Shown here piece by piece: positions 5,100 through 64,000 of a stretch of 64,000 bases of DNA. The stretch comes from Malacoraja senta (taxonomy: Eukaryota), in the NCBI GenBank assembly GCA_038087875.1, contig CM075977.1:40920001-40984000 (forward strand), given 5' to 3'. The notes beneath the pieces were generated by a model. The model saw nothing but the letters and a program-made list of their open reading frames with translations, made no database searches and was not told the origin of the DNA. The first letter of the stretch is position 1. Each line of letters opens with the position of its first letter. The position numbers and the translations under genes are program-made.

Positions 5100-5101
5100 C
5101 A

Positions 5102-6825: not shown

Positions 6826-6834
6826 CTTGGGTCA

Positions 6835-10671: not shown

Positions 10672-10865
10672 CTAAATAAATCATTAAAAAAAAAATCAAG
10701 ATTGCAAATTAATCAGTCCAACCTCTACATACAAAGAATAACCCAGTAACTCAAAGATGGGGGAAGAACAACTATATTCAATGCTTCTTAAGAATTTGAT
10801 GCTAAAGAAACCATAGGCTGCAAAATTCACTTAAAAAAAAAAAAAAAAAAATCAGGAGTTCCAAA

Positions 10866-11603
10866 AGTAACACTAGCAAATTTGCAGATGACACAAAGCT
10901 GGGTGGGAGTGTGAACTGCGAAGAAGATGCTAGGTGCAGTAGGCAGTGAAGAAAGTTAATGGCATGTTGGATAACAAGAGGATTTGAGTATAGGTGTAAA
11001 GAGGTTCTTCTACAGTTGTACAGAACCCTGGTGAGACCGCAACTGGAATATTGTGTGCAGTTTTGGTCTCCTAATTTGAGGAAGGACATTCTTGCTATTG
11101 AGGGAGTGCAGCGTAGGTTTACGAGGTTAATCCCTGGGATGGCGGGATTGTCATATGAGGAAAGATTGGAAAGACTGGGCTTGTATTCACTGGAATTTAG
11201 AAGGATGAGAGGGGATCTTATAGACACATATAAAATTATAAAAGGGCTGGACAAGCTAGATGCAAGAAAAATGTTCCCAATGTTGGGGGAATTCAGAACC
11301 AGGGGCCACAGTCTACGAAAAAAGGGGAGGCCATTTAAAACTGAGACGAGAACAAACTTTTTCACCCAGCGAGTTGTGAATTTGTGGAATTCTCTGCCAC
11401 AGAAGGCAGTGGAGGCCAATTCACTGGAGGAATTTAAAATAGAGTTAGATAGAAGTTTTGGGGCTAACGGAATCAAGGGGTATGGGGAGAAGGCAGGCAC
11501 GGATTACTGATTGTGGATGATCAGCCATGATCACAATGAATGGCGGTGCGGGCTCGAAGGGCCGAATGGCCTCCTCCTGCACCTATTTTCTATGTTTCTA
11601 TGT
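10866..11603 (+). mobile_element. CR1 LINE 3' portion
   Basis: FADDTKL remnant, ORF 10959-11510 (LVRPQLEYCVQFWSP, RGDLI), (TTCTATG)n tail. Confidence 0.92.
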
Positions 11604-12105
11604 ATCCTGATCATAGAGATTCGGGAGTAGGTTTTGTACATGTAAGATAATCCATGTTAAGTGAACTCCTTCTCCATGGCAATTTTTCTCATGTATTTAA
11701 ATTCAACGGCAGTAATCTTGCCACAGGGGCAGTAAATCATAAACACTAATGCAGAGATTTGACCATACAATCAGGGTTGACACTGATGCTGTTTAAGGAG
11801 TGTTACAACAGTGATGTGGTTTTAGATGACATTGGACCAAGATTCCTTCTACCTTAGGTACATTGAAATGATTCCATGTTAGGATACAAGCTTGAGGAAC
11901 TCTCCCATTTTATCAACCAATATCACTTAAAGCTTACTCTACATATTGCTTGTGGCATTTTATGCGTGGAAATTGGCTGCCATATTTCCCAAGTACTTTA
12001 ATTTGAAAAAATATTTAATGTAGTTACATAAACACATTTAGAAATCCAAAGCATTTTTCAGTCAAATGTGTTTAACTAATTTATTGATAAAATATAGATA
12101 GCTAC

Positions 12106-12175
12106 CTGGAAATAGTGATAGTACAGTCATCAGGGTTCCAACTAGACGGTTCACTGGTGATAAATAAAATAGAAC
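12106..12175 (-). CDS. AVL9: AVL9 coding exon (~exon 9): VLFYLSPVNRLVGTLMTVLSLFP
   Basis: Translation match. AG at 12176-12177, GT at 12104-12105, 70 bp. Confidence 0.95.
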
Positions 12176-12741
12176 CTGCAAAGTAAGTTGCTGTTTTACT
12201 ATCACACTCAAAAACAGATAATAAATATTATTAAAAAACATACAATTACTAAAGGTTTCTAGCAATGTCATAAATTGAAAACCATTGACTCCCATCTCAG
12301 CAAATTTCAGGTGGAGTAAATGTTAAGGTAAAATGGTCTACTTGTAATCTTAAACCAAACTACAATCTAAAAGCAACAAAATTGCAGTTGGTGGAAGTCT
12401 GAAGTAATACTAAGAATGGAGCTAGGACCTCTGGCTCAGAATAGAGATATTGTCTTTATCATATTCATCACTTCCCCACCCTTTTGGCTACTTAAAACTA
12501 GTCTGTTTGTCACATTCCCACAGTCTGTTGAATGGCCTACAACCCGAAGTGTTAACTCTATCCAGATTCTATTTCGCTATTCACATATGCTGATTCCTGT
12601 ATTTCCTGTTTTATTTCTGATTTCCAGTGACTGCAGTCTTCTGATTTTCAAACATGTTAACACTCTTAGTTGTACAAATGTTCTGAATGCAAGAGAAAAT
12701 TTGATGAGGATTAACTACTTACACTTGCCAAGATTACTTAC

Positions 12742-12780
12742 TTTTTTCTCTAAAAGAATCAATTTGAAGAGAATTATTGT
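12742..12780 (-). CDS. AVL9: AVL9 coding exon (~exon 8): TIILFKLILLEKK
   Basis: 39 bp, polypyrimidine-CAG acceptor, GTAAGT donor; fills the expected gap in the protein. Confidence 0.9.
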
Positions 12781-13039
12781 CTGCAAAAAAAGCCTAAAAT
12801 TAGCATTTGTATGAGCAATTGTATGATTGAGGACAAAAATTACATTTATATAGTACATTTACTACTGTAAAACATTCCAACACCCTTCCTGGAAATGTAA
12901 TTTGAAAAAGACCGCCATTTTAAGGAGACATGATCATAAACCAGATCGGTTTTCAGAGCATTGTAAAGAAAGGAGAATTGCTTTGCAAGAGGTGAAGTTT
13001 GAGAACAGCTTTCACAAAAAGCAACAAAAAGATAAGCAG

Positions 13040-13300
13040 CGTCCAGACGAGAGGGCCTGTACACCTGGCCCCCGCAGCGGCGACTGCGGAGGTTTATGGC
13101 CCCGACCACGGGAACAATGGAGGAGGACTGACTGTACTTTGTGCCTTCCACCAGTGAAGAATGCTGTGGTGGATGTTTGTGTTAAATTTTGATTGTGTAT
13201 TGTGTGTTCTTTTTTGATTGTACTGCTGTTGGCAAAATTCATTTCACTGCACTTTATTGTGTATGCAATGAATACATCTGATTGATTGATTGATTGATTG
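13040..13300 (+). mobile_element. Truncated non-autonomous retroposon with Rex1-like 3' tail and (TTGA)n
   Basis: TTCATTTCACTGCAC..GTGTATG resembles the Rex1 3' end at 26420-26470. GCCTTCCA..GTGGTGGATGTT is shared with the 5102/53590 family. Confidence 0.6.
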
Positions 13301-13517
13301 AGAAGAGGTTGTGGAGCCGAGGCCAGCATAGACGTCATGATCATGAGGCTTGAAGTGCCAAGTGGCCTACTCCTGCTCCTATTTTCGCCCATTTATTGTG
13401 ATTAAAGGTTAAGTACCATTAGATACTTGTCTTCATGTTTATATACTTAAATAAGAAAATTACTAAAGAAAAACACCAAAGTCACATGGAGGGGTGAGAA
13501 TCCTTGGATATGCTTGA

Positions 13518-14268
13518 GGGGCCCGTCCCACTTAGGCGACTTTTCAGTGGACTGCCTGCGACCTTCAAGCTCGCGGCACTCGCCTGAAAAACCGCGAACT
13601 GAACGGCGACCGTCAGAGCGGAACACACACACACACACACACATCGCAAAGGCGGGGGCCAGGGAAGCGGGGGAGCGCTGTCTGAAATTCACACGGAACA
13701 AAGCCAAGGTGATACAGACCACACAGGAAGGTTAAAGATGGCTAGCACAGTCCATGGTATGTCGTTTAAAAGAGCTGGGGGGGGGGGGGGGGGAGTAGGA
13801 GTGGAGACACTTTTAAGAAGCCAGAAAACTTTTAATAAGCCATAGATACACAGCTGTGAAGTTTAGGGGGCATTTAACACTACTGGTTGGTTTTCCTTGG
13901 TTCTGAAAACTCGTGCTTACGTTTTTTTTCCCCAATGAGCCAATGAAAACTACCGAAAACTAACTAAAACTACCTACGGCTACCTCGACTACCTACAATG
14001 ACATGGCGACCCCATTACCACTGCACCTACAACTACAAAACTATAGATTTTCTCCATGGCGACCAATTTTTGCTCGCAGAAAATGTTTCAACATGTTGAA
14101 AAATTTGCTGCGACCATACTGACGCTGCGACTAATTCCCAGACTGCGGGAACTCCTCTCGACCATGAAGGAGACTCACCAGAGACCACCAGCGAACATGT
14201 GGCGACCATGTGGCGAGCGCAGAGTCTCCTGCACTCGCCTAAAAAGTCGCCTAAGTGGGACAGGCCCT
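13518..14268. mobile_element. MITE, probably PIF/Harbinger-like
   Basis: TIRs GGGGCCCGTCCCACTTAGGCGACTTTT / AAAAGTCGCCTAAGTGGGACAGGCCCT; TGA/TAA flanks. Confidence 0.8.
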
Positions 14269-14270
14269 TA

Positions 14271-15980
14271 AGGGTGATTCTTCAGTAAGTGTCTACTTTT
14301 AATTTTCTGGAAACCTGAAAATAAAACTTAAATATTTGCAACTTTGAATGTTGTTTCACATAGATGAACATCTCTACTATGGGAAAAAATATGTTTGCCG
14401 CAATTTTTTAGAGAATTTAATTTATTTTTTCCTCTTCTTTTTCCAGGTTGCCCATTGCATTTAGTCATATCAGTCATATTTTTATGATGAACACTGCAAA
14501 ATAACTGATTTAAGAATATTAAATCAAATTTTTGTCACAGTCATTCAAATTAGAGTATCTTCCTCAAATAAAACACACAAAAAAACTTTATCAGTCAAAC
14601 GCATTGATTTTAAACCTTCGTAACAGCTTACTGCTGAAAAAAGTCGTGATTTGCAGCAAGAATGGTAACCTTCACATAACCTTTCATCAACTTCCTCTAA
14701 AACAATATTAACCAGATGAGTAGGCAGAAGCATACTGTTCATTTATCAACTACAATTGATAATTATGGTAATTGTTGTATTATTTTACACATTATGAGCA
14801 TAAAATACTCGTGTGACAGATATGACTCAGCATGGTGGAAATGATCAAGCTTGGGAGCGCCACGTGATGGATGACTAAAACTATCTTTAGGGCTAGTGTT
14901 CGGGCTAGGGCTGGGGCTAGGGCTAGGATTAGGGTTAGGACTCGGGTTAGGGCTGGGGCTAGGGTCACTTACCCCCAATCTCCAGCAACTCCAGCTCCAT
15001 CTCCAGCCGGGCGCAAAGTCATCGCAGCCGTCGCATCTTCCCGTGACCTGATGTCCCTCTCCATGCCCGGCCCTCTGCAGCCCTTGTTCCCCGGTGGGGG
15101 GGAGAACAAGGGCTGAAGGGGGCCGGGCGTGGAGAGGGACATCGGGTCACGGGAAGAAGCGACGGCTTTGTGTCCGGCTGGAGATGGATGGAGATCGGGG
15201 GTTAAGTTGCAGATGTGGCCGTAACGGGAATGGTAGCCCAAGCCTTTAGCCCAGGATGGCCTCGCCGGAAGGCCATACCTGGCCATATCGTTTGGACGAA
15301 TGGCACATGGCACGATTTGTTCTCCAGAACAAATCCAAAAAGAACAATTAAAAAAAAAATTCTAAGAGTTCAGCACCGTTCGGGAATGGCGCTGAATAAA
15401 GGTACGTCTGATATGCAGCAGAAAACGGTGTTTTCACACGCTTCTTATCCCGCGAATCAGGAGAAATTCACAAGGTAGCGGCATTTTGAATTCTGCAGTC
15501 TTTTGAAGTCGGAGTTCGCGTCTTTTCTATTCATAGCCATGTGGGATTGCTGAACAAAGGTGCGTGACGGTAAATGACTCCAATCATTGGGACAAGGAAT
15601 TTTTGATAAAACGGTAAGATTTATAATTTTATCGAGAATAGAGGAATTTTTTTAAGGGTGATAAATATTTTAATTATTAATATCTACCGTTTAAAAATAT
15701 TTTCATTTCAGATAGATCCCCCACTAAATAAATATGCCGACTTGAAATTTCACTAGTAACCATCGGGAAATGCGTTTTTCGCGGCGGAGGGGGTCATCGA
15801 ACATCGGGAATTAAAAAAAAAACTAACACTTTATTCATTTAGGGTTTAATCTTTAATTATGAGGATTATGTTTATTAGCTTTATAGAAAAAGAAGAAATG
15901 GGATAGACTTATGGATTTTCCTGATATACAGCATCAAAGTAGCGGGACACCAAAGTAGACACTTACTGAAGAATCACCCT
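14271..15980. mobile_element. 1.7-kb non-autonomous DNA transposon with perfect 29-bp TIRs
   Basis: AGGGTGATTCTTCAGTAAGTGTCTACTTT at 14271-14299 and its exact reverse complement at 15952-15980. No transposase ORF. Confidence 0.85.
14887..14964 (+). repeat. Degenerate telomere-like hexamer array (TTAGGG/CTAGGG/CTGGGG)
   Basis: About 13 units of 6 bp, read directly. Confidence 0.85.
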
Positions 15981-16474
15981 TGAATTCAAGGTTTCAAGGT
16001 CAGTTTATTGTCACATGTACCAGTTAAGGTACAGTGAAATTTGTGTTATCATACAGCCATACTAAGTGAAAAGCAACAAGACACACAACCACATACAAGT
16101 TAACAAAAACATCCATCACAGTGGATTAAAGAAAGGACCAACAAATGACATGATTTTACAAAGGCTTTTCACAAAATTATACATGACCAACTGTCCAGAA
16201 CAGTACGAGACTATACCAAGAGTTTTGGAAAAAATATCAAGCTACAAATTTTCTTCTGACACCAATCTCTAGACTAATTCTGACTAATATTAAATAATGG
16301 AATACTGAAATAGTTTCTGCTATTATAAGCCTGACAACAAATGCACAGGTTCCTACGGAAATCAATAATAAATTATGACTCATCACTATTGGTAAAATTA
16401 TTTAATTATAATGCATCTTTATTGCAACAAAAAAAACCATGGCATTTTATAAACCAAGCATAGAGAAAGACTTA

Positions 16475-16978
16475 AGAGTCTGTCCCACCGCGGCGACCTA
16501 ATCCGCGTGTTCTGGCGAGTTTGCCCTCGACTCATACTCGCAGCATGGTCGACACAAAGTCCTAGGAGGTCTTTGTAACTACCCTTCATGCTCTTGAGTA
16601 GTCCCCGTGTACTCGAGGCCTCAGCTAGGTCGCGGTGTATTTTTCAACATGTTGAAAAATTCCTGCGAATAAAAAAGGTCGCCATGGAAAAAATCAATAC
16701 TTTTTTTACTCGTAGGTTTAGTCGAAGTAGGTCGGCATGTTATTCGTAGGTAATCAAGGGGGTTGAAAGGAGGTCGAAGGAGATCGAAGGAGGTCGTCTT
16801 CACTCTCCACTATTCGGTGTCCAATTTTCCCGAAGCTAGTCGAAGCTAGTCAAAGCTAGTCTTCAACATAGTCGAAGGAGGTCTTCTACATAGTCAAAGG
16901 AGGTCTTCAACATGACATTTAACTCTCATCAAACTCTCCTAAACTCACCAATTAGATCGCTGCAGTGGGACAGCCCCT
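16475..16978. mobile_element. MITE, same TIR family as 13518-14268
   Basis: AGAGTCTGTCCCACCGCGGCGACCTAAT / ATTAGATCGCTGCAGTGGGACAGCCCCT; TTA/TAA flanks. Confidence 0.78.
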
Positions 16979-49986: not shown

Positions 49987-51671
49987 CTGTGCACTCGGCT
50001 CTATCATCTTTGGTGTAATCAGTGTTGTAGGAACAGTTGTTTGATATAGCTCATCTATCACATCACATATTTTAGTTAATTTTATTGTAAATGTTTTCCC
50101 CCGTTCCCCCATTTCCCTCCCATCTTTCCTCCCCACCCCCTCCTTTGCGTAGTTTCCCTTGCATCGTATTGTGCAGATTCCCTACTATTGCTTGAACACA
50201 CACTGTGCACAAAATTAAATTTAACTTATATATATATTTATATGAATGTGTGTTTGTGTGTGCCTGTGTGTGAGAGGCAAGTTAGAGATAAATACATACA
50301 TGGATCAGAAGCAACTTTGATTTAAAGCATCACCATCACTCTCTATCTTATTTGTCAGATGATGTACATAGACCATAAAGGCAATTATATATATAATTAT
50401 ATACATATAAATATATGCATATGTATATAAATATATTTATATATATTTACAAGCTGCACACAAAATATGACATATGGGGTCAAATTTCAAATTCCTTGAC
50501 AAGCACTTTATTGGGTTCATGACTGACATAGTATCAACAACAAATGTAGAAAAGATAGCACATTGATGACAAGTTTCCAAAAATGGCATCAGAATACACA
50601 AAATCATTTTGTGTAATGGTTGTCGCGTGGTGTCCACCAGTGACCTGGTTGGCACAGTAAGTGCATGTATTTCTTATTCCTTTCTATGTTGATGAATACC
50701 ACATGGAACAATAAAATTGCAAACACCATTTCCATTTCATTCACCTGATCATGTAGTAGAATACTGCATCCATCTGAGTGGACACCGCATGTGATCTAAA
50801 CGGTACATTACCTTGTGGATCTGAGTGACATAGATGGCTGATGAGACAGTGTGTTGCTAAATTGAAGATTGGCTCAGTTTTAGTTTTGATGAACAATTTA
50901 TGTAAAAAAAAGGTGATATCGATGTATATATATACACACAAAAATAAATATTTCTCTAGTTGTGATTTCCTCCTAATTTGTTTAGCNNNNNNNNNNNNNN
51001 NNNNNNNNNNNNNNNNNNNNNNNNNNNNNNNNNNNNNNNNNNNNNNNNNNNNNNNNNNNNNNNNNNNNNNNNNNNNNNNNNNNNNNNNNNNNNNNNNNNN
51101 NNNNNNNNNNNNNNNNNNNNNNNNNNNNNNNNNNNNNNNNNNNNNNNNNNNNNNNNNNNNNNNNNNNNNNNNNNNNNNNNNNNNNNNNNNNNNNNNNNNN
51201 NNNNNNNNNNNNNNNNNNNNNNNNNNNNNNNNNNNNNNNNNNNNNNNNNNNNNNNNNNNCCAGCAAGCCTTTGATACCGCGCTACGCCAACACCGCACGC
51301 AGAACCGCCGAGATTTTTTCCATTTCGGTAGAGATTTCACTTTTCTTTACAAGTAGTTGCTCCTGATTAAATTTCGTTGTGTTTATGTACACATTTTTAA
51401 TAAAATCCATCTCCCCCCCCCCACCCCCCAAAATTTCAAAATGTTAAAAAAAAAAAACAGCTCTCAGCCATAGAATGTTAGTCAAGGTTCCGTCGTGTGA
51501 TGTCACAATGCCCAATGCTCACAGATGTCCAATCGGACTGGATCCATTTACATATGCCTTTGCAGCAGTCCCAGCCCCCGCCCCCCCCGCCAGCCTGTGT
51601 CGAAGCGCGTCGTCACGTGTGGGAATAGAAAAAGACGATTGGGGGTGATAGGGAATGGGGAACAATGGACT

Positions 51672-52980
51672 GTCCCTACCCCTTCCCTCCCTCCACACTC
51701 TTCCCCCTCCCCTCCCCTACCCCATCTCCTCCTCCCTTCCCTCTCCCTCCCCCACACCTCTCTCCCCCTCCCCTTCCCTCTCTCCCCCTCCCCGTCCCTC
51801 TCTCCTCTCCCTCTCCTCACGTCTCCCCTCCTCCCCCTCCTCCTCCCCACCCCCATCCCTCTCTCCCCCCCCCCCCTTCCCCCACAACCGCTCACCCCCC
51901 CCATGTCCCTCCCCCACCCCTCCCTCCTCTCCCCACCCCCTCCCCCATTCCCTTCCCCATCCCTTCCCTCTCTCCCCCACCCCCTTCCCCCTTCCCTCTC
52001 CCCACTCGTCCCCCTCATCCACACTTCCCACTCTACCCACTAACCCATCTCCCTCCTCGCCTCCCTCCCCCCTCCCCCACACCTCTCTCCCCTCCCTCTC
52101 TCCTCCCCTCCCCCACCCCTCTCCTCCCCCTCCATCTCCCTCTCCTCACCCCTCCCTCCTCCTCCCACCCCCATCCATCTCTCCCCCACCCCCTTCCCTC
52201 TCTTCCCCCGCACCCTTCCCCCTACCCTCTGTCCTCTTCCTCCACTCCCCTACCACTCTCCACCTCCATCCTCACTCATCCACTTCCCTCCTCCCTTCCC
52301 CCACCCCCACCCTCCCTCTCCCTCCCCCTCTCCCCCCACCCCCTTCCCCTACCCCTCTCCCTCTTCAACCACTCCCCCCTCCCCCCTCCCCCTCCCTCTC
52401 TCCCACTTCCACCACTCCCCCTACACCTCTCCCCCTCCCTTCCCATTCTTCCACTTATCTCCCCCACCCCACTCTCCCCCCCTCCCTTCCCTCTCCCTAC
52501 CCAATCTTCCCCCTCTCTCTGCTCTCCCCCTCCCTCCACTCTTCCCCCTCTCCTCACCCCTCTCCCTCCTCCCCGCCCACCTCTCCCTCCTCCCCTCCCA
52601 CCCCCTCTCTTTCCCCCTCCCCCACCCCTCTTCACCCCCACCTCCCCCCCACCCCCTTCCCCTCTCTCTTGCACCACTCCTCGCTACCCCTCACTCCCCA
52701 CTCTTCCCCTCTCCCTCCCTCCCTCTCTTCCCCTACTCCTCTCCCTTCCCCTCATCCCCTCTCTCCACCTCTAACATCCCCTCCCCCCTTCCTGCCCTCC
52801 CCGCTCTCCTCCCACTCCCCACTCTCCTCCCCTCCCTCTCCGCCACCCTGCTGTCCTCTCCCTCCCCAATCTCTCCCCTTTCCTCCTCCCCCTCTCCCCT
52901 CCCTCCCCCTCTCCTCTTCTCTCCACACCCCGTCTCCCTCTCCCCTCTTCTCTCACCACCCCGTCTCCCTCCCCCCCCGC
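51672..52980. repeat. Polypyrimidine (C/T) low-complexity tract
   Basis: Almost only C and T on the + strand; produces spurious Pro-rich and Gly-rich ORFs. Confidence 0.95.
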
Positions 52981-53087
52981 CTGTGTTTGGGGGGTGGTTA
53001 GTGTGAGTGTGATGCCGCAGCCTCCCTCCCCCCCCCCCCCCCGCAAACGCACGTTGGGGAAACAGCCCGCCAACAGTCTCTCTGTCT

Positions 53088-53203
53088 TTAAGAAGGAACT
53101 GCAGATGTCTGAAGATGGGTTTCGTCCAAAAGCGTAGCCTATTTCCTTCGCTCCATAGATGCTGCTGCACCCGCTGAGTTTCTCCAGCTTTCTTTTGTGT
53201 ACC
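53088..53203 (+). mobile_element. Short Penelope pLTR fragment with inverted head and mutated hammerhead core
   Basis: AAGAAGGAACTGCAGATG (inverted pLTR end) followed by CTGAAGA..AAAAGCGTAG and the pLTR tail. Confidence 0.75.
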
Positions 53204-53589
53204 AGTCTCTCTGTCTCTCCCCTCTCCTCTCTCTCTCTCTCTGCCCTTCTCTCTTCACAGCCCGCGGCTCGACTCATGCACGCCCGTTCCAACCCCACCC
53301 CCCTTCACCTCTCTCCCCTTCCTCTCCGCCCCCCTCCCCCCCCATCCTCACTCCCCCTCCTCTTCCCCCCCTTCCATTCCCCCCTTCCTCTACACCCTCC
53401 TCCTCCCCCCCTCCTCACAAAAAACGATAAGAATTAGCTTTATTTTTATTGGATTTAATTTATTTGTTTCTCATTTACCTGATCATTATAATCTTAAAAG
53501 ATTAATTTTTTAAGATTAACATTTGATTGCATTTCATTGTTAATTTCTTTATTTTTATTACATAATTTTCTCATTTAACTGTTCATTCA

Positions 53590-54570
53590 CTTCCGGAGTG
53601 GTGGCGCGGCCCTGGCTGCAGCGGCTCATCGGCAGTCCCGTTTGTTTGTGTTTTTTGTGTTGTTTATTTTGTTTTGGTTAGTCTAGTTTTTGGTTCTTAG
53701 TTTGTGTTTTGGGGGGGTGGGGGGTTGAAACGGGGTTTGCAGTCTCTCCCTGCGGGGGAATGTGACCTTTTTGTCGTATTCCCCTTCTCTGCCTCCGTCT
53801 GCGCTGAGGCCTAATGGAGCTGATGACCTCGAGGCTCCGGAGGCAGAGCCCGTCAGGACTCGCCCTGAGCTCGCTCCCGTGAGGGTGGTCCGGCTCAGGG
53901 CTGGAACAGTGCTCCCGTGAGAGGTTGTGGTGCTCTCGTGAGGGCAGCCAGCCCAAGGGTGGAACGAGGCTCCCGTTGGAGCGGCCGAGCTCGGGGAGGT
54001 GCGGCGCTCGCAGCCCGAGGGAGGTTCGGCGCCCATGTCGGGCGACCCGGCCGGAGGGAGAAGCGAGGCTCAAGTCGGGGCGGCCCGGCCGGAGGGAGAA
54101 GCGACGCCCAAGTCGGGGCGGCCCGGCCCGGGGAAGAGGCGACGCCCATGTCGGGGCGGCCTGGCTCGGGGGAGGTTCGGCACGGTACTCACGTGAGGGT
54201 GGCTGGGACGTTGTTCTGGCGGTGGTGGCCTGAGTCCGGGGTTCGGCCGCGGGCCAGCGGCTGCGTCTGCAGGACTGGTGGGCGGCAGCTTCGACCACCC
54301 CGGGCCGCGGTGTTTGAGCCGCGGGACTGATTTATATCATCGCCCGGGGGGTATCGCCTCAGCGCAGAGGGAGAAGAGGAGGGAAGAGACTGCAGACCAA
54401 AGACTTTTGCCTCCATCACAGTGAGGAGATGCTGGGTGGACTCACTGTGGTGGATGTTAATATGTGTTTATTGTTGTTTTTATTGTATTATATGTATCTG
54501 CTGCAATTTCGTCCAGACTTCGGTCTGAACGACAATAAAGGCATATCTATCTATATCTATATCTATCTAT
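53590..54570 (+). mobile_element. Full-length-looking GC-rich non-autonomous retroposon with ~38-bp internal tandem repeats and (TATC)n tail
   Basis: Head shared with the 3340 element, tail shared with the 5102 element; tandem units at 54030-54175. Confidence 0.75.
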
Positions 54571-56061
54571 TATAAATCTTCAAGAGTGCATTTCATTTTT
54601 TACATTAACATTTCATTGGATTTCATTGTTAAATTCTTTATTTGTTTTTCATTGAATTGAATTATTTTCACTTAACGTTACTACTTTTTAAACAATAACT
54701 TTTAATTTCAAATCCCCTCCCTCCCTCTCTCCCCCTCCTCTCTCCCCCTCCTCTCTCCCCCTTCCTCTCCTACCTTCCTCTCCCCCTTCCTCTCCCCCCT
54801 CTTCCTCCCCCTCCTCTCAAATTTTTTTTTCTAACATTACATTTTCCCCGTTTGTTACATCTTTACCATTTTGAAATTTCTAAATTCTTAACGATTGTCT
54901 TTAATTCTTAAAGACAACATTTCATTTCAAATACCGTTTTTTAGAAATAAATTTGCTGCCTTTTTATTGACAGCTTAGAGTCAAAATCATTGTTATTTCA
55001 CTTTGTCAACGTTGAATTTTTAATTTTTTTTTAAAGATAGTTTGTGGGGGCGGGTGCTTAGTGTCTGTCACTTTGCGGAGGCGGGCACGCGATCTCCATT
55101 CAAGCAGACGCTCTCATCTGTGGGGGCGCGTGCTTAGTGAAGAGTGCATTTCATTTCAAAGATTAATTTAAAAAAATTAACATTTGATTGCATTTCATTG
55201 TTAAATTCTTTATTTGTTTTTCATTGAATTGAATTATTTCTCACTTAACATTACTTTTTAACACTAACTTTTAATTTCAAATACCGTTTAAAAAAATAAA
55301 TTTTCTGTCTTTTCATTGACAGCTTAGATTCTAAATCATTGCTTTTTCACTTTGTCAACGTTGAGTTTTTTGGGATTTTTTTAAAAGATAGTTTAAAATA
55401 AACTTTTTTCTAACATTAAATTTTCCCCGTTTGTTACATCTTTACCATTTTGAAATTTCTAAATTCTTAACGATTGTCTTTAATTCTTAAAGACAACATT
55501 TCATTTCAAAGACAGCATTTTTTTGATTTTTAATTGACGTTTATATTGACAACATATTAAAAAAAAAATCATTGTAATTGATAACAGATTTCATTGTGAT
55601 TGATTTCATTCTAGAGGAAAGGCTCCATTTTCAAGAAATTTATCTGTTTTTATTGACAACTGAGATTTCAAAACAATTTCTTTGTGATTTATTTCATTTG
55701 ATCTGAAAGCTACCATTTGGAATATATTCATCTGTCATCATTGGGAACTGAGAATGTGTTTGGGCATTTTTTTATTCAGAAAAATTCCATTTTGAATAAT
55801 TTAATCCAGGCTTCATTGCCAACTGAGATTCTGTTTTCAAATCATGCCAAGAGGAAGGAATAGACATACAGGACGGTCGTGTGATGAGAAAATGAGACAT
55901 CGAGAAGTAATGAGGAGGAGAAAAGAACAACTGGACTCAGCAAGAAAGAACACAACATCTCCGAGATAATCCGGAGATAAACCAGGAGAGAAGGGCACAA
56001 CAGACACAGCCAGAAACATTTCAATGTCTCCAAGATAGTCGGGGTACACAGCGGGAGAGAA

Positions 56062-59000
56062 GTGCATATGAGACGAACCAGGAGAGAAGGGCACAAGAGA
56101 CACAGCCTGAAACATCTCAGTGTCTACAAGATAGTCGGGGTAGACAGCGGGAGAGAAGTGCACATGAGATGCAGCAAAAAACAAACTCAACGTCTCAGAG
56201 AAAAACGAGAGAGAGAGCGCAAGAGAAAGGCTGAAGAGACGCATCAAGAAAGAACTCAACGTCTCAGAAATCAACGAGAGAGGGAGGGGGAGAGAAGGGA
56301 TAAAGAGACGCTGCCAGAAAGAAGTCAACGTCTCAGAAATAAACGCGAGAGAGAGCAGGAGAGAAGGACTCAAGAGACGGAGCCAAAAAGAAGTCAACAT
56401 CTCAGAAATCAACGAGTGAGAGAGCAGGAGAGAATGACTCGAGAGACGGAGCCAGAAAGAAGTCAACGTCTCAGAAATAAACGAGAGAGGAAGCAGGAGA
56501 GAAGGACTCAAGAGACAGAGCCAGAAAGAAGCCAACGTCTCAGAAATAAACGAGAGAGGGAGCAGGAGAGAAGGACTCGAGAGACAGAGCCAGAAAAACG
56601 TCAACATCTCAGAAATAAACAAGAGAGGGAGCAGGAGAGAAGGACTCAAGAGACAGAGCCAGAAAGAAGTCAACGTCTCAGAAATAAACGAGAGGCGGAG
56701 CAGGAAAGAAGGACTCAAGAGACAGAGCCAGAAAGAAGTCAACGTATCAGAAATAAACGAGAGAGGGAGCAGGAAAGAAGGACTCGAGAAATGCATCAAG
56801 AAACAACTCAACATCTTGAGGAACATCAACAAAGAATACAAATGAGAAGGGATGCAGAGATGGGAGATGAAAGAACTAGAAGGCTGGATGAACAACGAAA
56901 TGCACGACTTACAAGGAGAAATATTAATGCTGATGTTGGTCAAATGACCAATGTTTGCGTTCATTGTCGAGCTAAACGCTACTCAGGAGAAACGACCCAC
57001 TTTTGCTGCATGAAGGGTAAGGTCAACATTGCTCCTCTGAAAACACTCCCGAATGCACTCATTAATTTGTATACAGGTGACACGCCACAAGCATATAAGT
57101 TCCAAAAGAATATTAGACAATACAATTGCCTCTTTCAATTCACGTCATTTGGTGCCAAGGAAGAGGTGTCACGTGGATGGAATCCTTCAGTGATCATTCA
57201 AGGCCAGATTCATCATTTCATTGGTTCTCTGATGCCTGACCAAGATCAACAAAGTAAATTCTTACAAATTTATTTCATGGACCCGCAAGATAGCATTGAG
57301 TTGCGAATGAGTATACTCCAAGATGCTGGTATTCAAAGGGACACTGTTGAAATGCTTGAAAACATGATAAGACTAAACAACCCTTACATTCATTCACTTG
57401 TGATGGCGATGGAGAGAATTAGAGATTTACCGGAGGCATCAATCGTTATTGATCCCAATTATCGGCCACCTTTCCAACATGAACGGAGGTTTAACACGCA
57501 AACTGCAAATGAAGTTGCCGTCCTCATTGCAAACAGTAATGAGCCTGTGGCAACATCATGCCACATTGTCTTGAGAAGAAGAGGAAGAGGAGGAGCAGAA
57601 GGAGGTCTGCAAATCATTTCAGAGTCCCATAGGTCTTATGACAGTTTTCAATACATCCTTTTCTTTCAACTTGGTGATGACGGGTGGCATTCACAACTCC
57701 AAATGAGTACCGGCAGAAAATTGACACTAATGCGATATTATGCATATAGGATCATGAATCGTGACAATGAATTCAACCAGCTTTTGAGAGGAGGACGACT
57801 CTTCCAACAATATCTTGTTGATATGGCGGCTAAAATGGAAGGTGATAGACTTAATTATATTCGCATGAATCAGGTATCGTTGAGGTCAACGATGTACAAA
57901 GGACTGAATGCATTACATGATGATGATGACTTGGAAAACATTGGAAGGCGCATCATCCTCTCTTCAACATTTGTCGGTGGTCCCAGATATATGATGGGAC
58001 GATGCCAGGACGCAATGATGTATGTTCGGAAGTATGGTACTGCTGCATTCTTCATTACAATGACCTGCAATCCAAATTGGAGCGAGATCCGACAGTGCCT
58101 CTTTCCAAATCAGCAGCCGTCTGATAGACCGGAATTAATAGCAAGAGTATTCGAGCTGAAAAGAAAAATATTCATGAAGACCGTCACTGGACCAGATGGC
58201 TTCTTTGGAAACTGTATTGCTTTCATCTTGACTATGGAATATCAGAAGAGAGGCATGCCTCATTTCCATTGTCTGCTTTGGCTTGATGAAGCGAGTAAGC
58301 CAAGACCTCAACATTATGAAAGATTTGTGCAAGCTGAAATTCCAGACCCACAAGCAGATCCTGAGCTGCATAAATTGGTACTCAAGCACATGATCCATGG
58401 ACCGTTCTGCAAGGCCACATCTCGATGTTGGAAGGAAGGAAGATGCACCAAGAGATTCCCAAAGCCATTTGTCGAAAGCACAATGTATGGAGATGATTCG
58501 TATCCTCTGTACAGGAGAAGATCTCCAGCAATGGGAGGATTTCAGGGACATCAAGAAGGACGTCCGTTACCGACTATTACTTCTAATTGGGTTGTGCCCT
58601 ATAATGCAGAACTATTGAAGGCTTTCCAATGTCACCTCAACGTCGAAATATGCTGCTCTGTACAGTCAATCAAATACGTCATCAAGTACACCTTGAAGGG
58701 ATGTGATCAGGCAGCTTTTGGAATTAACGTAAATGACGAGATTAAACAGTACCTGAATGGAAGATACATTGGTCCTTCAGAGGCAGCGGCATCAGTCCTT
58801 GGATTTCTTACTCATGAGAGACACCCCCCTGTCATTCGACTTGATGTACATCTACCAGACCAACAACAAGTATTTTTTGATGCTGCTCAGCAAGGGATGA
58901 ATGATGGAATGGCGAGAACCACTTTGACTGAATTTGTTCGATTGAGTTCTGAAGATCCATTTGCAAGAACACTATTGTACGTTGATGTACCTCGATTTTA

Positions 59001-60990
59001 TACATGGAGCAGCAAGAGATGGCAAAGAAGGAAGGTTGGGAAGAGAGTGGATAACTTCCCAGGTATCTTTGAAGTCAACGTTCTTGGACGAATATATGTC
59101 ATTTCTCCAAAACACGGTGACCTCTTCTACATGAGACTGCTTCTGCATCACGTGAAAGGACCAGTGTCTTTCGAGTCTTTGAAGACACATAATGGAGTAA
59201 TTCTTCCTTCCTTCAAAGACGTCTGCAGAGAAAGAGGTTTGTTGGAAGCTGACGACCATTGGCAACAAACAATGGAAGATGCTGATATGACAAGACTCCC
59301 CAGGGCAATCAGGGATTTGTTTGTTGTTCTGCTGACAAATACTGACATCAACGATCCTCTACAATTATGGGATCGCTTCAAGAATTGCATGTCTGAGGAT
59401 TACCTTGAAAGCGAGCGAAGAAGAAAAAGTGATCGGAATATCACAATTGATGACAGACATCATGATCAGGCTCTGTTTTATATTCAGGACAAGCTTGAGA
59501 ATTGCAACACCACACTGGAAAATTTTTCCTTGCCTCGACCAAGAAATGAAAGGATGGACATTGATGGTGAAAATGTTGATTTACTTAATGAATTGAATTA
59601 CAATAGATCAGAACAACAGCGATTTGTTGATGAGAATGAGCCTCTGCTGAATGCTGAGCAGAGAGAAGTTTATGACCATGTGTGCGACTGCTTGCAAAGG
59701 AATCTATCTTCAATGATTTTCATTGACTCACCAGGAGGAACAGGAAAGACATTTATCATAAATTTGATCCTCTCCACAGTTAGAGCTCAAGGTCAAATTG
59801 CCATTGCTGTAGCATCGTCTGGTATCGCAGCCACATTAATGCCTGGTGGAAGAACTGCACATTCTCGATTCAAGATACCTATCCATGTGACGGAGGATTC
59901 AACGTGCAACATCAACAGCAACTCTAAAACGGGAGATTTCTTCAGGAGAGTGAAGCTCATTGTTTGGGTTGAGTGTCCAATGATTAGGAGGGAGTGCTTT
60001 GAAGCGGTGGATAGAACTCTTCAAGATGTATGCCGCAAAAAGGATAATTTTGGCGGAATTCTTACCATTTGTTGTGGTGATTTTAGACAACTCCTTCCTG
60101 TAGTGAAGATGGGAAGTGATATTGATGTTCAAAACGCCTGCATCAAGACATCGTACTTGTGGCGGACTTTCACAAAGTTTGAATTGAAGAGAAATATGCG
60201 ATTGACCGAAGGAGAGGGTGATTATTCTAAATTTTTGTTGGATGTAGGAGAGGACAACATTGCAAAGAATGAAGACAATGAAATTGACATTCCAGAAGAC
60301 ATGGTTCTCTCAGCAAGAACACTGGATGACTGCATTGATTATATCTATCCAGCATTTGACCACCCTGCAACATTATTCTCTAACAATTGTATCTTGGTTC
60401 CTCACAATGATTCAATGAGAAAAATCAATTCTACGTGTGTCAGATGCTTCCCTGGAACCATGAGGGAGTACTATTCTTTCAATTCTGTCACTGACGGACC
60501 GAATTCAACTCACTTCCCAACGGAATTCCTCGATTCAGTCGAGATCTGTGGATTACCACCACACAAATTGGAGTTGAAGAAAGGATCTCCAATTGTTTTA
60601 ATCAGAAACTTGCAACCCCCAAAGCTATTCAATGGAACGAGGTTAATTGTAGAACAGCTGCACAATAATCTCATCGTTGCTAGAATCAACATGGGGGCCT
60701 ACAAAGAAGAGATTGTTCTCATTCCTAGGATGAAGATCAATTTGTCAGAAGATGAAAACATTCCCATTAGGCGGAGCCAATTCCCTATTCTGTCGAAATT
60801 TGCGATGACAATTCATAAGGCACAAGGACAAACCATGGAGAAGGTCTTGATGTACCTTGAGAAACCAGTATTTCAACATGGCCAACTATATGTAGCTCTT
60901 AGCAGAGGAAAGGTAAAGGAACAAGTAAAAGTGTTCCTGAAGGATGGGACATCAACCAGGAATGTTGTAATTAAACAAATGCTTTGTTGA
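56062..60990 (+). CDS. Helitron Rep/Helicase (RepHel) transposase, 1642-codon open frame
   Basis: Zn-finger CVHC..CC..GKV; HUH Rep motifs FITMTCNPNW, EYQKRGMPHFHCL, KYVIKY; Pif1 helicase motifs SPGGTGKT, GRTAHS, GDFRQLLP, AMTIHKAQGQT, GQLYVALSR. Confidence 0.97.
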   Translation: MHMRRTRREGHKRHSLKHLSVYKIVGVDSGREVHMRCSKKQTQRLREKRERERKRKAEETHQERTQRLRNQREREGERRDKETLPERSQRLRNKREREQERRTQETEPKRSQHLRNQRVREQERMTRETEPERSQRLRNKRERKQERRTQETEPERSQRLRNKREREQERRTRETEPEKRQHLRNKQEREQERRTQETEPERSQRLRNKREAEQERRTQETEPERSQRIRNKREREQERRTREMHQETTQHLEEHQQRIQMRRDAEMGDERTRRLDEQRNARLTRRNINADVGQMTNVCVHCRAKRYSGETTHFCCMKGKVNIAPLKTLPNALINLYTGDTPQAYKFQKNIRQYNCLFQFTSFGAKEEVSRGWNPSVIIQGQIHHFIGSLMPDQDQQSKFLQIYFMDPQDSIELRMSILQDAGIQRDTVEMLENMIRLNNPYIHSLVMAMERIRDLPEASIVIDPNYRPPFQHERRFNTQTANEVAVLIANSNEPVATSCHIVLRRRGRGGAEGGLQIISESHRSYDSFQYILFFQLGDDGWHSQLQMSTGRKLTLMRYYAYRIMNRDNEFNQLLRGGRLFQQYLVDMAAKMEGDRLNYIRMNQVSLRSTMYKGLNALHDDDDLENIGRRIILSSTFVGGPRYMMGRCQDAMMYVRKYGTAAFFITMTCNPNWSEIRQCLFPNQQPSDRPELIARVFELKRKIFMKTVTGPDGFFGNCIAFILTMEYQKRGMPHFHCLLWLDEASKPRPQHYERFVQAEIPDPQADPELHKLVLKHMIHGPFCKATSRCWKEGRCTKRFPKPFVESTMYGDDSYPLYRRRSPAMGGFQGHQEGRPLPTITSNWVVPYNAELLKAFQCHLNVEICCSVQSIKYVIKYTLKGCDQAAFGINVNDEIKQYLNGRYIGPSEAAASVLGFLTHERHPPVIRLDVHLPDQQQVFFDAAQQGMNDGMARTTLTEFVRLSSEDPFARTLLYVDVPRFYTWSSKRWQRRKVGKRVDNFPGIFEVNVLGRIYVISPKHGDLFYMRLLLHHVKGPVSFESLKTHNGVILPSFKDVCRERGLLEADDHWQQTMEDADMTRLPRAIRDLFVVLLTNTDINDPLQLWDRFKNCMSEDYLESERRRKSDRNITIDDRHHDQALFYIQDKLENCNTTLENFSLPRPRNERMDIDGENVDLLNELNYNRSEQQRFVDENEPLLNAEQREVYDHVCDCLQRNLSSMIFIDSPGGTGKTFIINLILSTVRAQGQIAIAVASSGIAATLMPGGRTAHSRFKIPIHVTEDSTCNINSNSKTGDFFRRVKLIVWVECPMIRRECFEAVDRTLQDVCRKKDNFGGILTICCGDFRQLLPVVKMGSDIDVQNACIKTSYLWRTFTKFELKRNMRLTEGEGDYSKFLLDVGEDNIAKNEDNEIDIPEDMVLSARTLDDCIDYIYPAFDHPATLFSNNCILVPHNDSMRKINSTCVRCFPGTMREYYSFNSVTDGPNSTHFPTEFLDSVEICGLPPHKLELKKGSPIVLIRNLQPPKLFNGTRLIVEQLHNNLIVARINMGAYKEEIVLIPRMKINLSEDENIPIRRSQFPILSKFAMTIHKAQGQTMEKVLMYLEKPVFQHGQLYVALSRGKVKEQVKVFLKDGTSTRNVVIKQMLC
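56185..56820 (+). repeat. 60-bp (20-aa) coding tandem repeat, ~10 copies, in the RepHel N-terminus
   Basis: Unit approximately SQRLRNKREREQERRTQETEPER; register visible line to line in the sequence. Confidence 0.95.
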
Positions 60991-63023
60991 GCAATGACTG
61001 CTGCATTAAGTGCTCAAATTTTCCTAAAGTCAATGAAAGAACGCAAAACTGAAGGCAACAAGCGATGCAAGAAGGAACCGAATGTCCAGAGTTTCGACAC
61101 TTTTGTTGATTGCTCCACAGTTCAACAAGGGATGTTTAACACAGCAATCACATTTCTGCACACAAAAGTTTAAAATGCTGCCTCAGAAAAAACTTCAAGG
61201 ACACATTAAGTGACATGTAAAATCTTGCCAGTTGCATTTGATTTTTGGATAGAAAGTTGCTGGAGCAGTTCTCATGCTTCATGATAAAGCTTGCAGATGG
61301 ATTATTTGCTGCAAGATATAAAACCACAGGCTTCCACATCTAGGGTATATCTATCAGGTACAGGTCAATTGTTGAGTCAATTATTGAGTAAATGATGATT
61401 GCCGAGATTTTGATGTTTGAGGATTTGGTGTTGGTAATGGCATTGAGTATCAAGGTTATGTGGTTAATTTCTGCCTTGTGGAAAATTATCGTTACTTTTT
61501 CTGTTTGACATGAGTGTTACTTTCCACTTTGGTCTATTGTCGAGTTATTTTGTTTGTAAGCATTGACTGCATTTTCTCAGGAGTTGCAGTGGAATTGAAA
61601 ATTCTGTAACCATCAGTGAATATCAACTTCTGATCTTAAGATGGATGAAAGGTCAGTATTTGAAATTATTTTGGACCGTGCATTGTTTTTTTTATCCTTG
61701 ATACAAAGTTACTTTAGTTTTTTCAGAATGCCCTAATACCATTCAAATGCTGCCTTTTTTTCTAGAGCTGTCACTGTCGCCTCATTTCTGGATCCGAGAT
61801 ATTTAGACTGAACATCTTTGGGATCTGCGAGAAATAAATGAAGGACAGTAGGGAACAAGCAACACAACAAGAAATTGATAGAAAACACCTAAATTGGTAT
61901 ATGATAGCAAATCTCCTTTTTATTTGTATGTTGACGGATTGACAGATAGAAGTTTATAAATATCTATATTGTAATAAATATCTCCTTTTTTAAAATTCAT
62001 GCCCAGAAGCAGGAGCAAACAAGTTGCAGGATGGTCAATGGACACTGTAAAGAGATGTTGAGAAGCAGTATGGAGCAGGTGAACAAGAGACATAACAAGA
62101 AAGGACTGAACCTCTTGAGGATCTTCAAAAATTAATGGAAGTTTGCATGGAACAAGAGACACAACAATAAGCTTCCAAATTACATACAAAATGGTACATA
62201 ATTGTGTAATGTTTTTTTAAAATTATAAGTAAATGCATTTATATATATAATTGTCTTTAGAAGTTTATAAATGTCTACAATAGATGAAATTACCGTTACA
62301 AGTTTATGAATATCTACATCGTGATAAATATCTTTCTCTTTTTTTACAGGATGCAAAGAGATGGGAGCAATCGAGTTGCTGGATGTTCAAGGAACAACAC
62401 AAAGCAACGTTGAGAAGCAGAACGGCACAAGAGACGAGAGGAAGTTGCCAAAATACAGCCAGATCTAAATGTCTTTAGAAGTTTATAAATATCTACAAAA
62501 GATAAATTGTCCTTTTTATTCATATGTTATTGGCTTCATAGAAGGAATGAAGACGCAACAAGAAATAACGTTAGAAATTTCTCCAAAAAAAGGAATTCAA
62601 GACAAAAGTAATGAACAGCCGTGACAAGAGAAACAATGTCTCGAGGGTCAATGAGAAAGAACACAAAACAGAGGGGAGCAAGAGACCCAAGAAGAAATAA
62701 CTGAATATGTCGAGGATCAACGAGAAAGAACACAAAGCATGGAGCAAGAGACACAACAAAAATGAACATAACTGAATACATTTTATATTTACCATTTAAA
62801 TTGTTGTATTTTAAGTTATTTACATTTTAAGATTTAATAAATCACTTTTCCACTTGCAGCGCCTGCCAGCCACTATCTCTCTGCTCTCTCTCTCTTTGAT
62901 CTTATCTTTTTCTCTGCCCTCTCTCTCTCTCTTCCACTCTGTCTGTGCACACTCTGCCCCCCCCTCTAGACGCACCTGAGAGGTGAGGGCTATTCGTCAG
63001 TGGATAGGGTGGAGATGGGATAA

Positions 63024-64000
63024 ATAATATCAGATCATGCTGCGACCTCCCTTGATCTTCATTTTCGTAAATGAACTAACCCCTTTAAGTGGAGGTTCAA
63101 CTCCTCACTATTAGCAGAGGCTCACTACATGCAATTCTTGCACTCCCAAATCACCCTATATTTTGAGCTGAATGACTCGCCGGACATAGAAAGAGGTATA
63201 CTTTGGGAAGCTTCAAACGCCTATATTAGGGGCCAACTCATTTCTTTTATCTCCAACCTAAAAAGAACCGAGACGTTCCAAACGGCAGATCTGTTGTAAA
63301 AAATAAAGGACATTGATGACAAATATGCATCTGACCCAAACCCTAACCTCTTTAGAGTACGCCTTAGACTACAAACAGACTTTGACCTAATATCCATTAA
63401 TAAAGCCAAACTACAACTGCTTAAATCTAGGCAACACTTTTTTGAATCTGGGGATAAAGCCGGAAAGCTTTTGGCCCATCAGGCCAGAAGAGAGGCGACT
63501 TCACGGCTAATTCCAGCCATTAGATCCAGCTCAGGGGAGACTCATACTGATCCTCTCAGAATTAATGAAGCATTTGCTAAATTCTACACTGAACTATACA
63601 CTTCCGACTGTCCCCCCACTGCAGGTGACATGTTGAGTAGTATGACGCTTCCTCGAATTGACGAAGAAGCCATGAGCGACTTGGGTGGTCCCATAACTAG
63701 CTGAAGTCCAAGCAGCCATCACATCGCTGCAAAGCGGAAAGTCACCCGGCCCTGACGGCTTCTCTGTAGAATATTACAAAGCTTTCTCTGACCTCCTCGC
63801 ACCAGTCCTGAGAGATATGTACAATGAGGCGTTTTTACATCGTCGCCTACCGCCCACCTTGTCGTGGGCTACCATCTCCCTAATTCTTAAAAAGGAGAAA
63901 GATCCCCTGCTTTGTGGTAGCTATAGACCAATCTCACTCCTGAATGTGGACCTCAAAATCCTTTTTAAAGCCCTTGCGCTTCGTCTTCAGCGAGTGATGC
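63024..64000 (+). mobile_element. L1-clade LINE ORF2 fragment (end of endonuclease to start of RT), with stops; continues past the window
   Basis: IISDH, WRFNSSLL, LWEA..AYIRG, ESGDKAGKLLA, KSPGPDGF, SYRPISLLNVDLKIL. Confidence 0.92.

What the first reader, a model, noticed from the sequence alone, without database searches (positions are those of the whole stretch)
56062..60990. Intron-less, stop-free Helitron Rep/Helicase ORF within the AVL9 locus
Seen: a 4.9-kb open frame with Zn finger, all three HUH-Y2 Rep motifs and Pif1 helicase motifs, antisense to AVL9 and upstream of the first AVL9 exon found (presumably intron 2). No endonuclease domain, so canonical Helitron rather than Helentron. 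Established: uninterrupted vertebrate RepHel ORFs are uncommon, and the active bat element was a reconstruction. Inference: a recently active family and a candidate for resurrection. Its 3' end appears displaced by the L1 at 63024.
Basis: partly seen in the sequence, partly recalled or inferred. Interest (0 to 1): 0.7.

Follow-up and report, generated by a model that had tools for sequence, protein, structure and literature searches.

The report
Disabled skate Helitron transposase copy
The long open frame is a real rolling-circle transposon (Helitron) gene lying backwards in an intron of AVL9 in a skate-like genome. This copy is lightly damaged and almost certainly dead, although its family looks recently active in skates.

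Summary
Window 56062-60990 (+) is a stop-free 1642-codon frame with a zinc-finger-like motif, an HUH/two-tyrosine Rep domain and a Pif1-type helicase, and no endonuclease. The best solved match is the bat Helraiser transposase (E 1.7e-219).

The copy is not intact:
- The native start (ATG 55844) is cut off by two single-base length differences, near 55932 and 56183.
- One codon is missing after 57907.
- The invariant Walker B aspartate reads valine (59968-59970). It is D in all 39 relatives aligned and in every skate copy.
- A retroposon sits in the 5' part (53588-54559).
- A LINE interrupts the tail.
- No Helitron end is visible: the 5' end falls in an N run and no hairpin-CTAG is in the window.

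The family is multi-copy and under purifying selection (dN/dS 0.26-0.39). Copies are 99.4-99.8% alike in Leucoraja erinacea. An identical 1651-residue frame stands at four or more loci in Rhinoraja longicauda. So this is a young family, not a domesticated gene.

Its nearest relatives outside skates are from the snail Physella acuta (64%); all others are 47% or less.

One RNA run gave no sign of expression.

The scan noted another full-length RepHel in this genome (s1-175104); it has not been followed up.

The parts
51260..55843 (+). 5' non-coding part of the element. It starts right at the N run 50987-51259, so the true 5' end is hidden. It holds a promoter-like module at about 51495-51545 and a C-rich array at 51670-53068.
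   Evidence: Co-linear homology to the regions upstream of RepHel in L. erinacea loci L003 and L005. In those loci the unit starts just after another Helitron's hairpin-CTAG.
53588..54559 (.). Window-specific 972-bp GC-rich retroposon insertion inside the Helitron's 5' part.
   Evidence: The flanks 53424-53587 and 54560-54902 are adjacent in L003 and L005. The tail 54353-54544 is 82% like window 5250-5454.
55844..55846 (+). Native start codon (MPRGRN...), now out of frame with the main ORF.
   Evidence: L005 and L003 read through from the same ATG. Rhinoraja, Physella and ERZ17085217 proteins start MPR/MPG/MPK.
55931..56184 (+). Stretch bounded by two single-base extra letters (about 55932 and about 56183) that shift the native frame twice.
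   Evidence: Alignment to L003 and L005. Contigs of runs X1 and X5 lack one letter at 55932, and X5 lacks one at 56183.
56062..60990 (+). The 1642-codon stop-free frame of the finding. It is in the native frame from about codon 42.
56187..56789 (+). 69-bp tandem repeat, 8.7 copies, encoding 23-residue basic/acidic repeats of the N-terminal region.
   Evidence: Tandem repeat finder. It aligns to the repeat region of the Rhinoraja and Physella proteins.
56956..57009 (+). Zinc-finger-like Cys cluster (C299, C302, C315, C316).
   Evidence: Aligned to the Helraiser Cys motif. These Cys are conserved in at least 90% of relatives.
57736..58689 (+). Rep nuclease domain with HUH (58261-58269) and the two tyrosines (58675-58689). 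It carries the private L732M next to HUH.
   Evidence: Pfam PF14214; motif alignment; polarised changes.
57907..57908 (+). Site where this copy lacks one codon that all other copies have.
   Evidence: 3-bp gap against L001-L005 and L002. All contigs of X1, X2 and X5 carry three more letters here.
59647..60924 (+). Pif1-type SF1B helicase domain. Walker A is at 59728-59751.
   Evidence: Pfam PF05970, PF21530; alignment to Helraiser and Pif1 structures.
59968..59970 (+). Walker B (motif II) codon GTT = Val, where every relative has Asp.
60991..62880 (+). 3' non-coding part with internal repeats. It is homologous to L. erinacea copies up to 62642 and to the Rhinoraja copy up to about 62880.
63075..64000 (+). 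Decayed, 5'-truncated LINE piece (stretch between endonuclease and RT, then the RT start) that runs off the window. It lies where the Helitron's last 100-250 bp with the hairpin-CTAG would be expected.
   Evidence: Frames with a stop and a shift; weak RVT_1 start. In L002 the terminus lies about 240 bp past the last aligned motif.

Best explanation
This is a defective, fairly young copy of a large autonomous canonical Helitron, about 11-12 kb in Leucoraja erinacea and about 18 kb in Rhinoraja longicauda. It inserted antisense into an intron of AVL9 in a skate-like genome. The element encodes a single RepHel transposase. That protein has N-terminal 23-residue repeats and a zinc-finger-like DNA-binding part, an HUH/Y2 nuclease that nicks and covalently holds one strand, and a Pif1-type 5'-3' helicase that peels that strand off for rolling-circle transposition. 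In this copy the gene can no longer make that protein. The native start is disconnected by two frame shifts, the Walker B aspartate needed for ATP hydrolysis is valine, and other conserved residues have changed. In addition, a retroposon and a LINE have landed in the non-coding parts, and the LINE separates the 3' end from the body. Shown here: the homology, the lesions, the multi-copy family and the purifying selection on the family. Inferred: loss of activity, and the role of the family as driver of the abundant non-autonomous Helitrons of this genome.
For: - Domains and Helraiser match.
- Other copies: five annotated L. erinacea loci are 95-96.6% identical to the window protein and at least eight Rhinoraja loci are 67-74% identical.
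- Selection: dN/dS is 0.39 (window vs L001), 0.31 and 0.26 (vs Rhinoraja).
- Polarised changes: the window branch has 22 replacement and 10 silent changes; the L. erinacea branch has 17 and 18.
- Private replacements at sites conserved in at least 90% of 39 relatives: R500C, D616N, L732M, D1303V, C1523F.
- Two frame shifts between the native ATG and the main frame.
- Codon loss.
- Retroposon in the 5' part.
- No hairpin-CTAG in the window, while sister copies have one.
- Helraiser needs its helicase ATPase and its left end: Walker A and arginine-finger mutants lose transposition (PMC4778049).
Against: - The 4.9-kb frame is stop-free, and the window branch still shows fewer replacements than neutral decay predicts (omega about 0.6). 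So the copy died recently or part of its branch predates insertion.
- Walker B Asp was not itself tested in Helraiser, so loss of activity is inferred from SF1 helicase knowledge.
- I had no reads from the window's own individual. Single-base lesions could in principle be assembly errors.
- Only one RNA run was laid, and its tissue is unknown to me.
Confidence: 0.85

Rival explanations
1. Intact, currently active autonomous Helitron copy. The 4.9-kb frame would make a working transposase from an internal ATG.
For: Stop-free frame with all Rep motifs and Walker A. The family is young.
Against: The native N-terminus of about 113 codons is disconnected. Walker B Asp is Val in this copy only. Other conserved sites are hit. 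Both ends are missing from view and a LINE lies in the tail. No RNA read was at least 99% alike.
Confidence: 0.05
2. Domesticated Helitron-derived host gene kept by selection at the AVL9 locus.
For: Long open frame; dN/dS below 1 against other copies.
Against: The family is multi-copy at unrelated loci in two species. The flanks of those copies are not homologous to the window's flanks. This copy has private losses at invariant catalytic sites and frame shifts. The low dN/dS is what transposase selection in an active lineage gives. No expression was seen.
Confidence: 0.03
3. The lesions are assembly or consensus errors and the real locus is intact.
For: No run holding this exact sequence was available: the best share of words was 0.54, and all contigs laid differ. 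One extra base lies beside a short A run.
Against: There are several independent lesions of different kinds: two single-base differences, a 3-bp loss, five replacements at conserved sites and two retroelement insertions. Most are not in homopolymers.
Confidence: 0.05

Closest known systems
Helraiser / Helibat1 (reconstructed bat Helitron; structure 7lcc)
   Same: It has the same single-protein architecture: N-terminal basic repeats and a Cys motif, HUH with two tyrosines, and a Pif1-like SF1B helicase. It aligns end to end at E 1.7e-219. Sister copies have a 3' hairpin followed by CTAG and then T.
   Different: The skate element is much longer, about 11-18 kb against 5.3 kb (PMC4778049), with several kb of non-coding DNA on both sides of the gene. 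The N-terminal repeat is expanded to about nine 23-residue units. It sits in a separate RepHel clade (Helraiser itself was not in the tree). This copy has Val at the Walker B Asp.
RepHel proteins of the snail Physella acuta (LOC131950184, LOC131941421) and three unnamed assemblies (ERZ17085217, SRR24189497, ERZ27288646)
   Same: These are the nearest relatives outside skates, at 58-64% identity. They form one clade with 100% SH-aLRT support on a long stem. They share the MP(R/G/K) start and the 23-residue N-terminal repeats.
   Different: The host phylum differs. The Physella repeats match Pfam STPRs (E 1.7e-27) while the skate repeats do not reach any Pfam family. I did not examine their termini.
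Helentrons (Helitron-like elements with a C-terminal AP endonuclease, common in fishes)
   Same: Rep plus Pif1-like helicase core.
   Different: No endonuclease domain is present, and the frame stops just after the helicase. Sister copies have the canonical hairpin-CTAG end.

Membership tests
Canonical Helitron (autonomous element) | RepHel protein with HUH motif and two catalytic tyrosines | tested here: met
   PF14214 at E 5.8e-55. H734-F-H736 and Y872/Y876 align with all relatives.
Canonical Helitron (autonomous element) | Pif1-like SF1B helicase domain fused C-terminally | tested here: met
   PF05970 at E 1.4e-66, and PF21530. It aligns to Helraiser and Pif1 structures.
Canonical Helitron (autonomous element) | No AP-endonuclease domain (separates it from Helentron) | tested here: met
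   No such Pfam hit, and the frame ends 21 codons after the helicase match.
Canonical Helitron (autonomous element) | 3' end with a short GC-rich hairpin about 10 nt before CTRR, followed by host T | tested here: not met
   None is in the window, allowing up to 3 mismatches or scanning with a general hairpin-CTAGT search. It is present downstream of the sister copies in L001, L003-L005 and L002. In the window a LINE lies where it is expected.
Canonical Helitron (autonomous element) | 5' TC end, inserted after host A, no target duplication | tested here: inconclusive
   Homology to sister copies runs up to the N run 50987-51259, which I did not fill. In sister copies the head is preceded by another Helitron's CTAG.
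Transposition-competent copy | Uninterrupted frame from the native start codon | tested here: not met
   Two single-base length differences lie between ATG 55844 and the main frame.
Transposition-competent copy | Intact helicase ATPase motifs (Walker A Lys, Walker B Asp-Glu) | tested here: not met
   Walker A is intact. Walker B reads Val-Glu, against Asp-Glu in 39 of 39 relatives and all skate copies.
Domesticated transposase gene | Single orthologous locus kept across species, without mobile copies | tested here: not met
   There are at least five loci in L. erinacea and at least eight in R. longicauda, on different chromosomes or contigs with unrelated flanks. Orthology at AVL9 itself could not be tested.

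The most novel reading that the evidence does not exclude
The RepHel family to which this dead copy belongs is a naturally active, or very recently active, vertebrate Helitron. Rhinoraja longicauda carries the same 1651-residue frame at four or more loci in units about 17-18 kb long, 99.1-99.9% alike and ending at a hairpin-CTAG. Leucoraja erinacea carries copies 99.4-99.8% alike. This family would be the autonomous driver of the abundant gene-capturing non-autonomous Helitrons that the scan keeps finding in this genome. Its lineage is shared with a freshwater snail and not with other vertebrates, which would point to horizontal arrival.
Probability: 0.35. Interest if true: 0.7.

Novelty: new member of a known kind. 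Interest (0 to 1): 0.42.

Why it matters
The only vertebrate Helitron shown to move is a reconstruction from dead bat copies. A skate family with natural, near-identical full-length copies would give a living system for studying rolling-circle transposition and gene capture in a vertebrate. It would also explain the many exon-carrying Helitrons in skate genomes. The window's own copy matters less. It is a dated, lightly decayed relic that shows a stop-free frame alone does not prove an intact transposase.

Tried and rejected
- Copy number from read depth was not possible. All DNA runs are Logan contigs, whose depth is not a copy number.
- No run holds the window's exact sequence; the best share of words was 0.54. 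So I could not check the lesions in the source reads or name the species.
- An empty-site test for the insertion failed for two reasons: the element is longer than the 6,000 letters allowed per reads call, and no eukaryote genome search was on hand.
- I searched for the 3' end beyond the L. erinacea breakpoint at 62642. The CTAG at 62967-62970 has no hairpin and is followed by A, so I rejected it as a terminus.
- The skate N-terminal repeats gave no Pfam hit even at E 10.
- Earlier-findings look-ups by the words AVL9 and helicase gave nothing useful.
- Paper searches for Helitrons in skates, elasmobranchs or Physella found no description.
- I did not run the large representative protein search, because the word search left nothing open.
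- I did not fill or look up the N runs.
- I found the AVL9 exons with short peptide patterns recalled from memory. They are a lead, confirmed only by the long matching translations printed.

Full report
**Observation**

The window holds one 1642-codon frame at 56062..60990 (+) with no stop.
- Pfam places a Helitron Rep domain at residues 559-739, a PIF1 helicase at 1196-1403 and the Pif1 2B domain at 1488-1533. It finds no endonuclease or OTU domain.
- The best solved structure is the Helraiser transposase (7lcc, E 1.7e-219), aligned over residues 198-1636. The helicase part alone also aligns to yeast, human and bacterial Pif1.
- The zinc-finger-like cysteines (299, 302, 315, 316), H734-x-H736, Y872/Y876 and Walker A (1223-1230) are all in place.
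- AVL9 exons lie on the minus strand near 47744, 32282 and 6155. The element is therefore antisense and upstream of the first AVL9 exon in the window. I cannot number the intron.
- A decayed LINE piece fills about 63075-64000.

**Other copies**

A word-based protein search found a 96%-identical protein in Leucoraja erinacea and a 74%-identical one in Rhinoraja longicauda. Next came two snail (Physella acuta) proteins at 63-64% and three unnamed assemblies at 58-61%. After that there is a sharp drop to 47% and below for more than 2,700 other Helitron proteins.

The 90% clusters hold five L. erinacea loci and at least eight R. longicauda loci. None is identical to the window protein; the L. erinacea ones are 95.0-96.6% alike to it. 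I fetched four L. erinacea loci (L001, L003-L005) and six R. longicauda loci (L002, L009-L013). Their flanks are unrelated to the window's flanks, so they are paralogous insertions and not the AVL9 locus.

No public run holds the window's own sequence. The best share of sampled words is 0.54. Contigs of three DNA runs from at least two labelled organisms differ from the window at the same places. The window therefore comes from a skate individual or species that is not among the indexed runs. I could not name it.

**This copy is not intact**

1. Native start. L005 reads in one frame from an ATG (MPRGRNKH...) into the zinc finger, and L003 starts the same way. The Rhinoraja, Physella and ERZ17085217 proteins begin MPR/MPG/MPK. 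The window has that ATG at 55844, but it carries one extra base near 55932 and another near 56183 relative to L003 and L005. The native start, the stretch between the two points and the main frame therefore sit in three different frames. Contigs of runs X1 and X5 also lack these bases. The first 40 or so codons of the 1642-codon frame are thus an out-of-frame read, and about 113 native N-terminal codons are disconnected.
2. Missing codon. The window lacks one codon after 57907 that all ten sister loci and all laid contigs have.
3. Walker B. Codon 59968-59970 is GTT (Val), where L001, L003 and L002 have GAT. This is the Walker B aspartate. It is Asp in 39 of 39 aligned relatives, in all L. erinacea and R. 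longicauda proteins, and in Helraiser.
4. Other conserved sites. I polarised the differences with Rhinoraja as outgroup. On that basis the window also has private changes at sites conserved in at least 90% of relatives: R500C, D616N, L732M (next to HUH, Leu in 39 of 39) and C1523F.
5. Retroposon. A 972-bp GC-rich retroposon sits at 53588-54559, inside DNA that is contiguous in L003 and L005.
6. No 3' end. The L. erinacea terminus (hairpin CAGACCC-aac-GGGTCTG, then cacttggtCTAG, then T) and the Rhinoraja terminus (GGGCCC-aac-GGGCCC, then actcggtCTAG, then T) have no counterpart anywhere in the window. The window tail aligns to the Rhinoraja tail up to about 62880. In Rhinoraja the terminus follows about 240 bp later; in the window a CT-rich stretch and then the LINE follow.
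7. 5' end hidden. Homology to L003 and L005 runs upstream to 51268, right at the N run 50987-51259. The 5' end is hidden there, and I did not fill it.

**Size and shape of the element**

In L003 the unit between two hairpin-CTAG ends is about 11.8 kb (4732-16526). In L005 it is about 11.4 kb. The Rhinoraja units are about 17-18 kb.

The gene is therefore flanked by several kb of non-coding DNA. This includes a C-rich array and a promoter-like module with a TGATGTCACAATG box and CCAAT boxes (window about 51495). Earlier agents reported a similar module in the abundant non-autonomous Helitrons of this genome (s1-193228). I did not test the TCTA detail of that note.

**Selection and age**

- dN/dS is 0.39 between the window and L001, and 0.26-0.31 against Rhinoraja. 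It is below 1 in every domain outside the N-terminal repeat.
- Silent divergence from the L. erinacea copies is 0.048. The 3' non-coding part shows 4.0-4.4% mismatches, so these two neutral measures agree.
- The window's own branch has 22 replacement and 10 silent changes (omega about 0.6). The L. erinacea branch has 17 and 18 (omega about 0.25).
- The numbers are small. They fit a copy that left a selected, active lineage and has since decayed by roughly half a percent. At that level about one stop is expected in 4.9 kb, so a stop-free frame is unremarkable.
- With the slow but unmeasured neutral rate of skates, I would put the age at the order of ten million years. This is inference.

**State of the family**

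- L. erinacea proteins P0001, P0121 and P0123 are 99.4-99.8% alike. L001 and L003 are open over the 4,056 bases compared, while L004 and L005 carry frame shifts.
- All four L. erinacea copies share Y1012H at a tyrosine that is otherwise invariant. Three of them share a different 3' tail from the point equivalent to 62642.
- In R. longicauda one 1651-residue frame is encoded identically at four or more places. The units are 99.1-99.9% alike over about 17 kb and end near the hairpin-CTAG. Most lie on unplaced, Helitron-rich contigs, two of them 45 kb apart on one contig. Segmental amplification cannot be excluded as part of the picture.
- Taken together, this is a young and possibly still active family. 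It is the opposite of a single domesticated gene.

**Function**

By homology the protein works as Helraiser does. The N-terminal part binds DNA. The HUH/Y2 domain nicks the transposon strand and holds its 5' end. The Pif1-type helicase unwinds 5' to 3' until the 3' hairpin signals the end.

In Helraiser, mutants of Walker A (K1068Q) and of the arginine finger lose transposition, the K1068 Walker A mutation abolishes ATP hydrolysis, and the left end is essential (PMC4778049). From general SF1 helicase knowledge, the motif II aspartate is needed for Mg-ATP. Val at that site, together with the lost N-terminus, therefore makes this copy non-functional with high probability. This is inferred, not assayed.

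**Expression**

One polyA RNA run (X23) gave 25 partial reads, none at least 99% alike. This gives no support for expression, but one run proves little.

**Phylogeny**

A maximum-likelihood tree of 35 RepHel proteins puts the skates, Physella and three unnamed assemblies in one clade, with 100% SH-aLRT support on a stem of 0.87. This clade stands apart from insect, hagfish, flatworm, rotifer and Nucella Helitrons. The skates are monophyletic (99). I chose the rows from the best 120 hits; Helraiser and other vertebrate Helitrons were not in the tree.

The pattern is patchy, as is usual for Helitrons, and it is compatible with horizontal transfer. However, 64% identity is far from a recent snail-skate exchange, and the sampling is thin.

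**Literature**

The held library has no paper on Helitrons of skates, rays or Physella.

Noticed in passing
window 51670-53068: A 1.4-kb C-rich low-complexity array (CCCTC-type units, GC skew down to -0.92) lies inside the Helitron's 5' part. Similar arrays flank the RepHel copies of L. erinacea and R. longicauda, and one precedes the Rhinoraja 3' hairpin.
   Followed up: partly
window 51495-51545: Promoter-like module (TGATGTCACAATG, then two CCAAT boxes) near the element's head. The same module recurs at Helitron heads in L003 and L005 and again in the replaced 3' tail of L001, L003 and L004. It may link the autonomous element to the non-autonomous families noted elsewhere in this genome.
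   Followed up: partly
window 53588-54559: GC-rich 972-bp insertion with a 38-bp tandem repeat (54030-54174). Its tail is 82% like window 5250-5454, next to the GC-rich retroposon family noted at 3340-5099.
   Followed up: partly
window 55140-55579 vs 54582-55043: Internal duplication of about 450 bp (83-86% alike) in the 5' non-coding part. This makes alignments of that part to sister copies ambiguous.
   Followed up: no
window 56187-56789; P0003 residues 1-330: The 23-residue N-terminal repeats are expanded in both skates and Physella. The Physella repeats match Pfam STPRs, a 23-residue DNA-binding repeat (E 1.7e-27), but the skate repeats hit nothing. The number of repeat units differs between copies.
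   Followed up: partly
L001, L003, L004 (from the point equivalent to window 62642): The three youngest L. erinacea copies share a different 3' tail. It has a poly-C, a copy of the head module and a LINE-like fragment, then the hairpin-CTAG. It looks like a chimeric tail that was spread with the element. All four L. erinacea copies share Y1012H at an otherwise invariant tyrosine.
   Followed up: partly
L010 and L012 (one 92.8-kb R. longicauda contig), L011, L013: The same 1651-residue RepHel frame occurs at four or more places, two of them 45 kb apart on one contig, in Helitron-rich unplaced contigs. This could be recent transposition, segmental amplification or both.
   Followed up: partly
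window 61947-62123, 62283-62435, 62551-62751: The 3' non-coding part holds repeated units that also occur three times, 1.2-1.6 kb apart, in the Rhinoraja tail.
   Followed up: no
window 508-2502 (+): 664-codon open frame with a reverse-transcriptase domain and zf-RVT: the C-terminal part of a LINE ORF2, unrelated to the finding.
   Followed up: no
window 55837-56964 (-): 375-codon antisense frame across the purine-rich repeat with no Pfam match. It is most likely a by-product of the repeat's composition.
   Followed up: partly
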